A stretch of 39,078 nt of DNA, taken from assembly GCF_001194135.2 (NCBI RefSeq), contig NC_068991.1, positions 64,435,227-64,474,304 of the forward strand. The letters run 5' to 3'. This stretch comes from Octopus bimaculoides (taxonomy: Eukaryota). Each line of letters begins with the position of its first letter. Position 1 is the first letter of the stretch. This document shows positions 19,851-38,378 of this stretch, piece after piece. The position numbers and the translations under genes are program-made. Under the pieces are notes generated by a model that was not told the DNA's origin, searched no databases, and saw only the letters and a program-made list of their open reading frames with translations.

Positions 19851-20085
19851 TACTCTTTTACTCTTTTACTTGTTTCAGTCATTTGACTGCGGCCATGCTG
19901 GAGCACCGCCTTTAGTCGAACAAATCGACCCCAGGACTTATTCTTTGTAAGCCTAGTACTTTTTCTATCGGTTCTCTTTTGCCGAACCGCTAGGTTACGG
20001 GGACGTAAACACGCCAGCATCGGTTGTCAAGTGATGTTGGGGAGACCAACACAGACACACAAACACACACATACACACACACACA

Positions 20086-20130
<45 letters not shown>

Positions 20131-20174
20131 ACTTGGGGATGGTCATATTGCCAGTTTAGCCAATAATCTTGCAA

Positions 20175-20220
<46 letters not shown>

Positions 20221-20384
20221 CGTCGGGCTTCTTTCAGTTTCCGTCTACCAAATCCACTCACAAGGCTTTTGTCGACCCGAAGCTATAGTAGAAGACACTT
20301 GCCCAAGGTGCCACGCAGTGGGACCGAACCCGGAACCATGTGGTTGGTAAGCAAGCTACTTACCACACAGCCACTCCTGCGCCT
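19851..20384 (-). mobile_element. SINE-BC, full length: tRNA-like head (B), internal microsatellite, 3' module (C), (AGTAAAAG)n tail
   Basis: Minus strand starts aggcgcaggagtggctgtgtggtaag...ggttcggtccc (A/B boxes), then cttgggcaagtgtcttctactatag, (TA)n/(TG)n, and ggcggtgctccagcatggccgcagtcaaatgactgaaacaagtaaaagagtaaaagagta. Confidence 0.95.
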
Positions 20385-23326: not shown

Positions 23327-23862
23327 TACTCTTTTACCCTTTTATTTGTTTCAGCCATTTTACTGCACCATGCTGGAGCACCACTTTAAGTCGAACAAAT
23401 CAACCCCAGAACTTATTCTTTGTAAGCCTAATACTTATTCTATTGCTCTTTTTTGCCGAACCTCTATCATAAGTTGTCAAGCGATGGTGGAGAGACAAAC
23501 ACACAAACATATATAAACATGTATATANNNNNNNNNNNNNNNNNNNNNNNNNNNNNNNNNNNNNNNNNNNNNNNNNNNNNNNNNNNNNNNNNNNNNNNNN
23601 NNNNNNNNNNNNNNNNNNNNNNNNNNNNNNNNNNNNNNNATATGTATATATATATATACAAGCCCGTTGTATATATATATATATTATATATATATATACA
23701 ACGGGCTTCTTTCAGTTTCCCTCTACCAAATCCACTCACAAGGCTTTGGTCGGCCCGAGGCTATAGCAGTAGACACTTGCCCAAGGTGCCATACAATGAG
23801 ACTGAACCCAGAACCATGTGGTTGGTAAGCAAGCTACTTACTACACAGCCACTCCTGGACCT
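23327..23862 (-). mobile_element. SINE-BC, full length, gap inside the internal microsatellite
   Basis: Both B and C modules closely match 19851-20384; tactcttttac tail. Confidence 0.95.
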
Positions 23863-23877
23863 AGAATTTTTATAATA

Positions 23878-25960: not shown

Positions 25961-26854
25961 AAATAGCATCAACAGAGATTAGATGCTGCTTTGTCGTTTG
26001 ACCGACTACGGATTTCTCATAACCAGACGATCGTTCACTTCGGGGTTTACAAGAACAACAACAAGGTCAACGACTAACAATCTGCAGATGTTACTCAAAC
26101 GTTTGGCATATGTGTCATGTCAGACGGAGGATTGGCCAATCTGGGGTTACATAACAACAGCGATAACAAAGAATCATTAGATTATATATGTGTGCCAATG
26201 CTGAATTGAAGAGAAAAAAATGATGCAAAATGAGAACAAGGATCAAAAGAGGAAACAGAAGCTAGGAGTGATGTAGAAAGAAAGAATAAGAATAAAAGAT
26301 AGAAATAACTCAAGAACACAATTAAAAAACAGAAAACAAATATAAGCCTAGAAACTGAAAGAAAACGTATAATTCGAAGACGGCAAAATTAAAAAGCAGG
26401 AGAGGTACAAAACATGATGTGAATAGCTTGAGATAGGTAATGGGTTATAATTATTTCTGAAGAAATTTAAGAAAAGAATATTAGTAGATCACAAAGAAAT
26501 GCAAATGTTATTCAAAATAGAAGTACAAGAATTAAAAGACATAGACAACTGTGAGAAAAGTTACTGCATCAATCATGGGAGCCTATGAATATTTAGTACC
26601 AAATATTTTTTTCTAATCTGAGAATCTTTCAGAAGTTTAATTCAGTCGCTGAAGTCATAAAGGCACAACATTGCCAAATTATGGTATTAAAAAAAAAAAA
26701 TTACGGAACTCTAATTATATAAATTTCAAAGACAACTTATAAGTCTGAACATTTGCTTTGGAGCCTCTGATATCGGCTGCTCTAGGTTACGGGTTACATT
26801 GGTTTCGTGCTGGTAGTCAAACCTATCATTGTACTAGTAATATGCATCCTATTG

Positions 26855-27463
26855 AGGGCGGCGAGTTGGCAGAAACGTTAGCGCGCCGGGCGAAATGTTT
26901 ATCGATATTCCGTATGCCGCTACGTTCTGAGTTCAAATTCCACCGAGGTCGACTTTGCCTTTCATCCTTTCGGGGTCGATAAATTAAGTACCAGTTATGC
27001 ACTGGGGTCGATGTAATCGACTTAATCCCTTTGTCTGTCCTTGTTTGTCCCCTCTATGTTTAGCCTCTTGTGGGTAATAAAGAAATAAGAAATGTTACGT
27101 TCTGAGTTCAAATTCCGCCGAGGTCAACTTTGCCTTTCATCCTTTCGGGGTCGATAAATTAATTACCAGTTACGCACTGGGGTCGATGTAATCAACTTAA
27201 TCCCTTTGTCTGTCCGTGTTTGTCCCCTCTATGTTTAGCCCCTTGTGGGCAATAAAGAAATAAGAAACGTTAGCTCGCTGGGCGAAATGCTTAGCGGTAT
27301 TTCGTCTGCCGTTACGTTCTGAGTTCAAGTTCCACCGAGGTCGACTTTGCCTTTCATCCTTTCGGGGTCGATAAATTAAGTACCAGTTTTGTACCGGGGA
27401 CGACTTAATCGACTGAACCACGCCTCCCCAAAAATTTCGGGCCTTGTGGTTAGAGTAGAAAAG
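26855..27463 (+). mobile_element. Trimeric SINE-A flanked by a 16-bp target-site duplication
   Basis: Three cores in tandem (units from about 26855, 27094 and 27263); TSD aatatgcatcctattg (26839-26854) / aatatgcatcctgttg (27464-27479). Confidence 0.95.
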
Positions 27464-27554
27464 AATATGCATCCTGTTGGAAAAGAATCTCGACGTTTTG
27501 CCCCACTTTTGCTTAATTGATTAAAAATAGTCGTTTATATAACAGGAGTGTGAA

Positions 27555-27780
27555 AAAGGCGGTGTACTGGCAGAACTGTTAGCACACCAGGCAAAATGCT
27601 TTGCAGCTACTTTTTTGTCTGTCTGTACGTTTTGAGTTCAAATTCACCCGAGGTCGACTTTGCCTTTTATCTTTACAGGGTCGATAAAATAATTACCAGT
27701 TGAACACTGAGCTCGATGTAATCAACTTACCAAGTTCCACTCAAATTACTAGCCTTGAACCAAAATTTGAAACCAATATT
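27555..27780 (+). mobile_element. SINE-A, full length, diverged
   Basis: aaggcggtgtactggcagaactgttagc head; ttgagttcaaattcacccgaggtcgactttgcc core. Confidence 0.9.
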
Positions 27781-28977
27781 AGACTACAGAAACAAATTCA
27801 TGAAAACTGAAGTTATGATTTCATTAAATCAGATCATTCATGTAAAAAAAATGTTCATGCTTTTTGCGTATAAAATGTTAGGAGTTAAAAGAGGATCAAC
27901 AAGCGTTATTACATATCATATCAAACGTCAGTTGTCAACATGCCATTCAAAGCAGTCGGAAAAGAGTAACTGTAGACTTTATAACTCCCCAACCGTGGAT
28001 AGAGTGGCAGTAATTTCTTTTTATTGTTGACGATGAACGTGTTTTAAACGTGACTTACCCGTTTACCCTGGCATACCAGAAAATACTCTTATCAATTTAA
28101 ACATACTGAGCTTCCTTTTTATATAATGACAAGCGCATTATTTTGTCCCCATGGAGAATCAGGATTGCAGTCAAGATAAGATTAAGCATTAATTCTGAAC
28201 TGGTTACCAACAATAGGCGCTACGATATCATTACGTTGTTATACAAAGCTGCCTAATCAGCAGCAAAATAATGATTCAATCCACTTCTGTATGAAGCAAT
28301 CGGTTGTCGGATCTCATTTTCAAATTCAGTTAAATAGTTTGAATTCTGTGTGATACCAAATAGAACAGTTCAAAGTTGAACAACATTAAAAACTTACCAA
28401 TTACCTAGCTACTGTTGTTGGCAATGCAAATAAATCATGTAGGATGTATAGCTATTTTCCTATTTTATTTCAAGTATCACCAAGTAACACAAGAGACCAA
28501 TGCAGCAAGGCCATTGTTGTCGGGGAAAATTTGGAGAGCCAGGTATATTTACCACTACGATATGCAATTCTTCCTGCTATGAAATTACACATAATCTTAT
28601 ACCCAGAAGACACCCCTTAAACAGAATAGATATTGTGGTATTTAAAATAAAACTGCAAGAATTATTGAAAGATATCATGGAAATAATATTTGAGGAAATG
28701 TTCAGGCTTATTGCTTTTCCATTAAATTCTAGAAACGAGAATGACTTCATGCTCATACGTTGAACGGGGGGTTATAAAATGTTCAATGACTCATGAAAAA
28801 AATACACGCAGTTATGTGCACAGAAATACCTGATTTAATGGCTTGGTTAAGAAATGCATTATTCATGGTCCCTGTGGCAATCTAACTCCGAATGCACGAT
28901 GTATGGAAAATAATACAAGTAGTAAATGATTCTGCAAGGAATTCGGTGAGAATACTGAAGCTAATGCTGACGGTTAA

Positions 28978-29226
28978 CCAATGTACAAAAGACGACCAAA
29001 TACCTATTTCTTTACTGGCCACAAGGGGCTACACACAGAGGGGACAAACAAGGACAGACAAACGGATTAAGTCGATTATATCGACCCCAGTGCGTAACTG
29101 GTACTTAATTTATCGACCCCGAAAGGATGAAAGGCAAAGTCGACCTCGGCGGAATTTGAACTCAGAGCGCAGTGACAAACGAAATACCGTTAAGCATTTT
29201 GCCCAGTACGCTAACGTTTCTGCCAC
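28978..29226 (-). mobile_element. SINE-A with the alternative (beta) tail and a remnant of a second unit
   Basis: Head, core, then taatccgtttgtctgtccttgtttgtcccctctgtgtgtagccccttgtggccagtaaagaaata/ggtattt junction, as at 38052-38378. Confidence 0.95.
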
Positions 29227-29444
29227 TGTGCAAATTATGAACAACACAGATGACTGCGGACAATTTGTTCCTCGCAGTAAACATTAGTTTCAAGCTTACT
29301 TGCCATATTAGTATAGATGTACACTGATACAGGGTTGAACATCGACACCAACATTAATAGCAATAAGCCCAACAGTTTTAAATCTACTAAATTATTACCG
29401 TTCTTGGCCGTCTGACCTTAGTTACGCCTCCTTTAACCTAAGCC

Positions 29445-29655
29445 TTTCCTCTACTTGTTTCAGTCATTAGATTGAGGCCATGCAGTCTAATGAGTGAGAC
29501 CAGAAATTATTTTTGTTTTTAAGCCTCGTACTTATTCTATAGATCTCTCTTTTACTGAACCGCTAAGTTACCGTGGACGTAAACACAGCAACACCGGTTG
29601 TCAAGTGGTGTTGGGGGCAAACACAGACACAAAGACACACTCACTCACACACACA

Positions 29656-29706
<51 letters not shown>

Positions 29707-29869
29707 GACGTGCCTCTTTCCAGTTTCCTTCCAACAAATCCACTTACAAGGCTTTGGTCGAGCCGTTGCTAGAGTAGAAGACAATTACGCAAGGTGCCAC
29801 GTAGTAGTATTGAACCCGGTACCATGTGGTTAGGAAGCAAATTTCTTACCACACAGCCATGCCTGCGCA
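29445..29869 (-). mobile_element. SINE-BC, diverged, internal (TG)n
   Basis: cttgtttcagtcatt, gaaccgctaagttac, ggttgtcaagtggtgttggggg, (CA)n, aaatccacttacaaggctttggtc, cttaccacacagcca. Confidence 0.9.
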
Positions 29870-37960: not shown

Positions 37961-38051
37961 TTCGTCATCTCCGAAGTAGATACTGTTGAGAGACGAAGGC
38001 ATTCTCAATCCGGAGTCCTGGACAGTAGGCATAGCATCGTCCACAGTACAC

Positions 38052-38378
38052 AACTGGTACTTAATTTATCGACCCCGAAAGGATGACAGGTAAAGCCGAC
38101 CTCGGTGGACTTTGAACTCAGAACGTAAAGACAGACGAAATACCTATTTCTTTACTGCCCACAAGGGGCTACACACAGAGGGGACAAACAAGGGCAGACA
38201 AACGGATTAAGTCGATTATATCGACCCCAGTGCGTAACTGGTAGTTAATTTATCGACCCCGAAAGGATGAAAGGCAAAGTCGACCTCGGCGGAATTTGAA
38301 CTCAGAACGCAGTGGCAGACGAAATACCGCTAAGCATTTCGCCCGGTGTGCTAACGTTTCTGCCAGCTCGCCACCTTA
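38052..38378 (-). mobile_element. Dimeric SINE-A (head, core, beta tail, partial second head, core)
   Basis: Two gataaattaa...ccag cores; junction aaagaaata/ggtatttcgtc shared with the 28978 copy. Confidence 0.95.

What the first reader, a model, noticed from the sequence alone, without database searches (positions are those of the whole stretch)
26839..27479. Trimeric SINE inside a single 16-bp target-site duplication, using two alternative 3' tails
Seen: 609 bp with three cores bounded by aatatgcatcct(a/g)ttg on both sides. Units 1 and 2 end in a beta tail (taatccctttgtctgtcc...ccttgtggg.aataaagaaata); only unit 3 has the usual monomer tail (ccccaaaaatttcgggccttgtg). Unit 3 begins at agaaacgttagc, inside the A-box region. 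Unit 2 looks like the same start with about 50 nt removed between two cgtta microhomologies. Only unit 1 has a complete promoter. Inference: a multimeric RNA was retrotransposed as one piece, or a dimer expanded in place; the beta tail behaves as a linker that is always followed by another partial unit here. That suggests a chain-building SINE architecture.
Basis: partly seen in the sequence, partly recalled or inferred. Interest (0 to 1): 0.7.

Follow-up and report, generated by a model that had tools for sequence, protein, structure and literature searches.

The report
Three-unit composite SINE in octopus DNA
This is one insertion of a three-unit "chained" short retrotransposon (SINE) in an octopus genome; the same chain design turns up at other loci, so it is a real family trait, but it belongs to the already known class of dimeric and trimeric SINEs.

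Summary
A 609-bp element (26855-27463) lies between two 16-bp direct repeats that match at 15 of 16 bases (chance about 3e-8).

Its parts are:
- a 16-nt 5' cap;
- a 217-nt unit R that ends in the "beta tail";
- a second R that lacks exactly 42 nt between two CGTTA repeats, which gives the 175-bp period at 95% identity;
- a terminal unit that starts at the same point but keeps the ordinary tail.

The beta tail is a diverged copy of the ordinary tail with an ~18-nt insert, and it always ends in ...aataaagaaata.

The host is Octopus. The same cap-less junction (beta|agaaacgttagc) and the ~217-nt spacing recur in ORFs from unrelated public contigs. Other beta copies are joined to units truncated at other points. 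One beta copy is terminal with its own target-site duplication.

I could not decide whether this copy was already a trimer when it inserted (favoured) or was a dimer that expanded in place.

It is a new member of the known class of complex (dimeric/trimeric) SINEs. Interest is modest.

The parts
26839..26854 (+). Left target-site duplication AATATGCATCCTATTG
   Evidence: matches 27464-27479 at 15/16 and abuts the first base of the SINE.
26855..26870 (+). 5' cap AGGGCGGCGAGTTGGC (16 nt). Present only in unit 1. Carries the first bases of the A-box-like motif TGGCAGAAACG (26867-26877).
   Evidence: full-length monomers start (a)aggcggcgagctggc. Units 2 and 3 lack it.
26871..27087 (+). Unit R1 (217 nt): head starting at agaaacgttagc, conserved body with B-box-like GAGTTCAAATTCC (26929-26941), and beta tail (27020-27087) ending in aataaagaaata.
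27030..27047 (+). Beta-specific insert of about 18 nt (TTTGTCTGTCCTTGTTTG) that sets the beta tail apart from the ordinary tail. The second copy is at 27205-27222.
   Evidence: Alignments. The flanking tail sequence aligns with ordinary tails, best with the monomer at 35829-35615.
27088..27262 (+). Unit 2 (175 nt): same start (agaaatgtta) joined directly to cgttctgag, so it is R minus 42 nt. Contains a B-box-like motif (27104-27116) and beta tail (27195-27262).
   Evidence: gap-free 175-bp register with unit 1, 9 differences.
27263..27463 (+). Terminal unit 3 (201 nt): starts at agaaacgttagc. CGTTA repeats at 27268-27272 and 27310-27314. B-box-like motif at 27321-27333. Ordinary tail 27412-27463 ending in gtagaaaag. 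The element's only TTTT run is at 27387.
27464..27479 (+). Right target-site duplication AATATGCATCCTGTTG
38030..38378 (-). Related copy C: cap, unit and beta tail joined directly to a second unit that starts at ggtatttcgtctg. No ordinary 3' end and no target-site duplication found.
28987..29228 (-). Related copy D: 5'-truncated unit with beta tail and the same beta|ggtattt junction as C. Its second unit stops after 18 nt at a TTTT run.

Best explanation
The element is one retrotransposition insertion of a multi-unit (complex) SINE from an abundant Octopus SINE family.

The family design is: cap - (R)n - terminal unit.
- The 16-nt cap plus the first R carry the only complete A-box-like and B-box-like pair, so one Pol III transcript would start there and read through the downstream units.
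- Each R (217 nt) ends in the beta tail. This is an internalised, diverged copy of the ordinary tail with an ~18-nt insert, and it works as the joint between units.
- Only the last unit keeps the ordinary non-poly(A) tail that a partner LINE's reverse transcriptase would use for target-primed reverse transcription. That step makes the single 16-bp target-site duplication.
- Here n = 2, and the second R has lost 42 nt of its now useless head by slippage between two CGTTA repeats.

I favour that the copy was already trimeric in its source RNA. Unit number would change by template jumps of the reverse transcriptase between the repeated units, or by unequal recombination.

Shown: the anatomy, the target-site duplication, the homology of the tails, and the recurrence of the junction and of the 217-nt period at other loci.
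Inferred: Pol III transcription, the LINE partner, how units are added, and the timing of the 42-nt loss.
For: - Target-site duplication: 15/16 match exactly at both ends, chance 2.9e-8. Other family members have duplications of 5-18 nt that begin AATA/ATAT.
- Both beta tails are followed by the same agaaa(c/t)gtta, so the joint existed before unit 2 did.
- Host: SINE-derived exons occur in Octopus bimaculoides proteins, and copies occur in a 76-kb O. bimaculoides locus.
- Recurrence of the joint: ORFs P0036, P0020, P0040, P0042 and P0011 read head|beta tail with no cap. For example, P0036 QGVNVA|YLYIAHNWLNINGT matches the window's QRANVS|YFFIAHKGLNIEGT. P0036 residues 23-115 are collinear and ungapped with window 27372..27094.
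- Period: successive joints are 72-73 residues apart, about 217 nt. P0040 holds at least 3 R units, one with a different head deletion of ~33 nt.
- P0033 and P0043 appear to show cap + R followed by the same joint. This rests on my reading of weakly similar residues.
- Units 1 and 2 have no private shared substitution. 26998T, 27066T and 27075T are shared by unit 1 and the outside beta copy L021 but not by unit 2.
- Complex dimeric and trimeric SINEs are an established class.
Against: - No second copy with the exact 42-nt-deleted joint was found.
- The outside evidence comes from translated ORFs of unknown species and unknown flanks, 35-65% identical. Those arrays could themselves have grown in place.
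- A single 175-bp duplication is one event, whereas duplication plus deletion is two.
- The 5 versus 4 split of differences between units 1 and 2 is what equal-aged sister copies would give.
- This copy has a TTTT run in unit 3. No tRNA likeness was detected, so Pol III transcription is only assumed.
- One beta-tailed unit inserted alone.
Confidence: 0.55

Rival explanations
1. A dimer (cap-R-unit 3) was inserted, and the locus later expanded in place. This could be one out-of-register 175-bp tandem duplication at the CGTTA/CG(C/T)TA microhomology, or an in-register 217-bp unequal exchange between units 1 and 3 followed by a 42-nt deletion.
For: - Gap-free 175-bp register at 95% identity.
- The duplicated segment includes the first 9 nt of unit 3, so it postdates the joint.
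- Differences split 5:4 between the copies and 5 of 9 are CpG transitions, as expected for two copies ageing side by side.
- Units 1 and 3 are 92% identical over 92 nt of body and lie in direct orientation, a ready substrate for unequal exchange.
- No N gap lies inside the element, and 5% divergence rules out an assembler duplicate.
Against: - No substitution is unique to units 1 + 2 in 167 nt.
- Two non-CpG states and one CpG state of unit 1 are shared with the outside copy L021 and not with unit 2. I estimate the chance of that at about 0.005-0.03 if the two units were sisters.
- Arrays of two or more R units occur at other loci, so multi-R sources or frequent multi-R formation exist.
Confidence: 0.28
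2. The chain was assembled during this one reverse-transcription event. The enzyme started on the ordinary tail of a standard SINE RNA, or of a dimer RNA, and jumped to further RNAs: end-to-end onto the exact 3' end of a beta-tailed RNA, and once through the CGTTA microhomology. The units would then come from different source RNAs.
For: - The beta tail always ends at ...gaaata, with no spacer, whatever follows it: agaaacg in the trimer, ggtatttcg in C and D, and about aattaag in L021. The same end is seen where it is terminal in L020.
- The pattern of a full-length 5' partner, a 5'-truncated 3' partner and one target-site duplication is that of template-switch chimeras, including tripartite ones.
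- Units 1 and 2 each resemble different outside beta copies.
- By contrast, a proven sequential insertion in the family leaves a spacer equal to the new target-site duplication.
Against: - Unit 1's beta tail is followed by 9 nt of a unit-3-type head. The RNA jumped onto was therefore already a dimer, not a plain beta RNA.
- The same joint position recurs at many loci, which is more simply explained by inheritance from one founder than by repeated jumps to one position.
Confidence: 0.12
3. Three separate events: a beta-tailed SINE inserted first, and later 5'-truncated SINEs inserted one after another at the AATA-type target beside its tail.
For: - Tandem insertion next to a resident tail does occur in this family. 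In L020, monomer c sits inside monomer b's right target-site duplication and is flanked by AATAT. Monomers E and F in the window sit in tandem within (ATT)n.
- Targets begin with AATA/ATAT.
Against: - There is no spacer and no internal target-site duplication at either joint.
- Unit 2 ends in a beta tail and begins with unit-3 sequence, which an independent insertion cannot give.
- The 16-bp duplication encloses the whole element.
Confidence: 0.04

Closest known systems
Complex (dimeric/trimeric) SINEs as defined in SINEBase, such as the dimer/trimer tRNA-unit SINEs of colugos and armadillos (cited in PMC3531059 and PMC4758252)
   Same: Several SINE-like units lie head to tail and move as one element with one target-site duplication. 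The promoter sits in the first unit. Families exist with different unit numbers.
   Different: Downstream units are all cut at one fixed point (position 17) and lack the cap. The internal tails are a diverged 'beta' version with an 18-nt insert. The terminal tail is not A-rich. No tRNA likeness could be shown. Unit number seems to vary (2 to at least 4 units).
Primate Alu (two related monomers joined by a linker)
   Same: Two related monomers are fused. The working promoter is in the left unit, and a degenerate former tail acts as the linker.
   Different: Alu derives from 7SL RNA, has an A-rich linker and a poly(A) end, and has a fixed two units. This comparison rests on general knowledge and was not tested here.
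Template-switch chimeric retrogenes, such as U6-L1 in mammals and the WEIRD / Mg-SINE / MGL bipartite and tripartite chimeras of Magnaporthe (PMC2104539, PMC4476161)
   Same: A full-length 5' partner is joined at its exact 3' end to a 5'-truncated 3' partner, with one target-site duplication. Tripartite cases are explained by two template jumps.
   Different: Those chimeras are mostly one-off fusions of unrelated RNAs. Here the partners are related SINE units, and the main joint recurs at many loci, so it is heritable.
Octopus SINEs OK, OR1 and OR2 (Ohshima and Okada 1994; OR2 is listed as a CORE-SINE in PMC4758252)
   Same: Same host genus, and reported as tRNA-derived short retroposons.

Membership tests
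SINE (SINEBase definition, PMC3531059) | Short (<1 kb) interspersed, non-tandem genomic repeat | tested here: met
   About 13 copies or fragments in the 39-kb window and about 20 in the 76-kb O. bimaculoides locus L020, all with different flanks.
SINE (SINEBase definition, PMC3531059) | [quoted passage not shown] | not testable with these tools
   No octopus genome can be searched here. The sampled density of about 1 copy per 3 kb suggests far more than 100. SINEs are reported at 4-12% of Octopus genomes.
SINE (SINEBase definition, PMC3531059) | Head >=60% identical to a tRNA, 5S rRNA or 7SL RNA over >=60 nt | tested here: not met
   ARAGORN found no tRNA in the window. Rfam gave no hit at E<=1 in 26700-27900. 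Only A-box-like and B-box-like motifs are visible, about 50 nt apart.
SINE (SINEBase definition, PMC3531059) | Flanked by target-site duplications of variable sequence (LINE-mediated insertion) | tested here: met
   Trimer 15/16 of 16 nt. L020 beta copy 14/15. L020 monomer b 14/18. Further monomers 10-15 nt by eye.
Complex (dimeric/trimeric) SINE | Two or more complete or nearly complete SINE units combined in one element inside one target-site duplication | tested here: met
   Units of 233, 175 and 201 nt, each with the conserved body, inside one 16-bp duplication.
Complex (dimeric/trimeric) SINE | The same combination recurs at independent loci, so it is a family and not a one-off | tested here: met
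   The joint beta|agaaacgttagc without cap occurs in ORFs P0011, P0020, P0036, P0040 and P0042, with a period of about 217 nt. This evidence is at protein level only, and the flanks of those loci were not seen.
Complex (dimeric/trimeric) SINE | Transcribed as one RNA from the promoter of the first unit | not testable with these tools
   No RNA data were available. The only TTTT run in this copy is at 27387 in unit 3.
Template-switch chimeric retrocopy | The 5' partner ends at its exact RNA 3' end, the 3' partner is 5'-truncated at variable points, and there is a single target-site duplication | tested here: inconclusive
   The beta end ...gaaata is exact in every context, and three truncation points are seen. 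However, the main joint is recurrent, which points to inheritance.
Local microhomology-mediated tandem duplication | Head-to-tail copies in perfect register with short homology at the joint; the copies are exclusive sisters | tested here: inconclusive
   Register and CGTTA homology are met. Exclusive sisterhood is not supported: there is no shared private substitution, and three unit-1 states are shared with L021.
CORE-SINE / OR2 | Presence of the CORE central domain | tested here: inconclusive
No curated CORE or OR2 sequence was at hand.

The most novel reading that the evidence does not exclude
The octopus SINE builds chains by a quasi-programmed route. The LINE reverse transcriptase repeatedly stops at one fixed point of the head (position 17, inside the A-box / D-arm-like region). 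Each time, it jumps end-to-end onto the exact 3' end of a free beta-tailed SINE RNA. Units are thus added one RNA at a time, and beta-tailed RNAs spread mainly as passengers of standard-tailed ones.
Probability: 0.12. Interest if true: 0.6.

Novelty: new member of a known kind. Interest (0 to 1): 0.3.

Why it matters
SINEs make up roughly 4-12% of Octopus genomes and have been linked to genome reshuffling and neural expression. Yet a recent curated annotation still lists nearly all recently active families as "unclassified SINE".

Recognising that part of this load is a multi-unit family (cap - (R)n - terminal unit) with an internalised tail as the joint would have practical uses:
- Repeat libraries could avoid splitting one element into several hits.
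- Age estimates would improve, because internal units are not independent insertions.
- The family offers a tractable case for asking how complex SINEs gain units: inherited masters, template jumps, or local expansion.

It does not change any general principle of retrotransposon biology.

Tried and rejected
- Exact-pattern scans for the beta tail or the conserved body in the metagenome, viral and prokaryote-genome collections gave only chance hits of 20-30 nt, or nothing. My beta pattern was too strict and would have missed the diverged L021 copy.
- One protein search with 15 window ORFs concatenated returned nothing and wasted a capped search.
- A search with a mariner-like transposase remnant from L020, meant to harvest more octopus loci, returned contigs of another organism with no SINE copy.
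- P0002 could not be located on a contig.
- No long clean ORF or obvious exon was seen in the window (no homology or domain search was run on them), so the orthologous site in other species could not be fetched.
- Rfam and ARAGORN gave no support for a tRNA origin. A CORE-domain resemblance recalled from memory was not significant.
- No target-site duplications could be found for copies C, D and L021.
- Assembly artefact was rejected: there is no N in the element and the two units differ at 9 of 175 sites. A true scaffolding duplicate in L020 is identical on both sides of an N gap.
- I first favoured a simple local 175-bp duplication. I demoted it after the outside ORFs showed the same joint and the 217-nt period elsewhere.

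Full report
**Observation**

AATATGCATCCTATTG (26839-26854) and AATATGCATCCTGTTG (27464-27479) match at 15 of 16 bases. They touch the first and last bases of a 609-bp SINE-like element. With the window's base composition, such a match at a fixed place has probability 2.9e-8.

The element contains the conserved SINE body three times. Exact coordinates:
- cap: 26855-26870, 16 nt;
- unit R1: 26871-27087, 217 nt, from agaaacgttagc to the beta tail ...aataaagaaata;
- unit 2: 27088-27262, 175 nt;
- unit 3: 27263-27463, 201 nt, with the ordinary tail ...gtagaaaag.

Unit 2 begins agaaatgtta and runs straight into cgttctgag. Unit 3 still has CGTTA at 27268 and at 27310, so unit 2 lacks exactly 42 nt between these repeats. 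Because 217 - 42 = 175, units 1 and 2 also read as a gap-free 175-bp tandem repeat at 95% identity.

No N lies inside the element. The 9 differences exclude an assembler duplicate. A real scaffolding duplicate in another locus has the same sequence on both sides of an N gap.

**Family and host**

The window is eukaryotic, rich in microsatellites and N gaps, and carries about 13 copies or fragments of the same SINE.

An antisense ORF of the element matched SINE-derived parts of Octopus bimaculoides proteins. One of those proteins gave a 76-kb O. bimaculoides chromosomal locus, L020, with about 20 further copies. A 543-bp metagenome contig, L021, gave one more.

Full-length monomers start (a)aggcggcgagctggcagaa and end ...agaaa(a/g)g, with no poly(A). 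They carry target-site duplications of 5-18 nt that begin AATA/ATAT.

ARAGORN and Rfam give no tRNA signal. The "tRNA-type promoter" therefore rests only on an A-box-like motif (26867-26877) and a B-box-like motif (26929-26941).

**What the beta tail is**

Alignment shows that the beta tail is homologous to the ordinary tail. It differs by an insert of about 18 nt (27030-27047) and by substitutions. It is closest to the tail of the monomer at 35829-35615, which ends ...ggtcaataaagaaagg. It is not a second, unrelated tail.

Wherever it occurs, it ends at exactly ...gaaata. An HMM built from the six beta tails found no further copies in the roughly 115 kb of octopus DNA available.

**What follows beta tails**

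In DNA:
- In the trimer, both beta tails are followed by agaaa(c/t)gtta.
- In window copies C and D, the tail is followed by ggtatttcg....
- In L021, it is followed by the last ~95 nt of a standard unit.
- In L020, it is terminal, with its own target-site duplication AATA(C/A)TATAAGGCCT, 14/15.

In proteins, an exhaustive search with a window ORF that reads through a beta copy gave 39 hits, mostly ORFs on short Logan contigs.
- Mapped back on the trimer, P0036 residues 23-115 are collinear and ungapped with window 27372..27094. That stretch runs from the unit 3 body through the head, the joint and the beta tail into the unit 2 body.
- P0036's QGVNVA|YLYIAHNWLNINGT matches the window's QRANVS|YFFIAHKGLNIEGT, with no room for the 16-nt cap.
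- P0020, P0040, P0042 and P0011 show the same cap-less joint. P0033 and P0043 seem to show cap + R followed by the same joint, by my reading of weakly similar residues.
- Successive joints lie 72-73 residues apart, about 217 nt.
- P0036 and P0020 have an inner unit with the full 17-residue head and a beta tail. This is the undeleted form of the trimer's unit 2.
- P0040 has at least three R units, one with a different head deletion of ~33 nt.

The architecture cap-(R)n-terminal unit is therefore a trait of the family and not a peculiarity of this locus.

**Are units 1 and 2 sisters?**

Of the 9 differences, 5 are derived in unit 1 and 4 in unit 2, and 5 are CpG transitions. That pattern fits two copies ageing side by side.

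Against sisterhood, no substitution is unique to the pair. Three of unit 1's derived states (26998T, 27066T, 27075T; the last two are not CpG) are shared with the L021 beta copy and not with unit 2. I estimate a chance of roughly 0.005-0.03 for that under sisterhood.

**Mechanism**

Shown:
- one target-site duplication around all three units;
- the same joint after both beta tails, so the joint predates unit 2;
- recurrence of the joint and of the period at other loci.

Inferred:
- Pol III starts at the cap and reads through; this copy's only TTTT run is at 27387.
- A LINE reverse transcriptase primes on the ordinary terminal tail.
- Heads of inner units are dispensable and decay by small deletions.
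- Unit number changes by template jumps between the 217-nt repeats or by unequal recombination.

I favour insertion as a trimer (0.55). The rivals are insertion as a dimer followed by local expansion (0.28), assembly by template jumps in this very event (0.12) and successive insertions (0.04).

A proven sequential insertion in the family leaves a spacer equal to the new target-site duplication: AATAT between monomers b and c of L020. The spacer-free joints of the trimer therefore argue against successive insertions.

The exact beta end joined to three different truncation points resembles template-switch chimeras, including tripartite ones. This keeps the template-jump model alive for how chains begin.

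**Comparison and novelty**

Dimeric and trimeric complex SINEs are an established class, about 13% of families in SINEBase. Alu is the textbook dimer, with a degenerate former tail as its linker.

This octopus family differs in four ways:
- a fixed truncation point for downstream units;
- a distinctly diverged internal tail;
- a non-A-rich terminal tail;
- an apparently variable unit number.

I found no description of it in the searchable literature. A 2026 curated O. vulgaris annotation lists 893 of 900 recently active SINE families as unclassified.

I rate it a new member of a known kind, of modest interest.

**Limits**

No octopus genome could be searched directly. The outside evidence for chains is at protein level, from contigs of unknown species and unseen flanks. 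The empty-site test could not be run, because no gene anchor was found in the window.

Noticed in passing
L020 66426-65977 (minus strand): Full-length monomers b and c lie head to tail. Monomer c sits inside b's right target-site duplication (AATATATGCTAGATGGAT vs AATATATACTAAATAGAC, 14/18) and is itself flanked by AATAT. This shows that new copies insert at the AATA-type target next to a resident tail.
   Followed up: partly
window 15318-14866 (minus strand): Two complete monomers (15318-15106 and 15076-14866) lie in tandem, embedded in and separated by (ATT)n repeats. This hints at a microsatellite-type tail or target for this SINE family.
   Followed up: no
window 27556-27800: An older, more diverged monomer of the same family (about 78% identical) lies only 77 bp downstream of the trimer, in the same orientation.
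   Followed up: no
window 38378-38030 and 29228-28987 (minus strand): Beta copies C and D share the joint beta|ggtatttcg and diagnostic bases but have unrelated flanks, no detectable target-site duplication and no ordinary 3' end. D's second unit stops after 18 nt at a TTTT run. Their mode of origin is unexplained.
   Followed up: partly
L020 40784-40798: An N10 gap inside the beta copy is flanked by the same ~55 nt on both sides. This is a scaffolding artefact of the public assembly, not a biological repeat.
   Followed up: yes
window ~20009-20350, 23453-23875, 29494-29833; several places in L020: A second abundant short repeat family (ORF signature ...EDTCPRCHAVGLNPEPCGW) sits next to (CA)n/(TA)n microsatellites. 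It was not characterised.
   Followed up: no
L020 ~53240-53553 (minus strand): A remnant of a mariner/Tc1-like transposase C-terminus, judged by eye from its sequence with no domain search run. Its nearest database relatives (45-67% identity) lie on ENA contigs that carry no copy of the octopus SINE.
   Followed up: partly
whole window: 4276 N in many gaps and very dense TG/CA, TA and ATT microsatellites. No long clean ORF or obvious exon was seen (no homology or domain search was run on the window's ORFs), so the window gave no gene anchor for finding the orthologous locus.
   Followed up: partly
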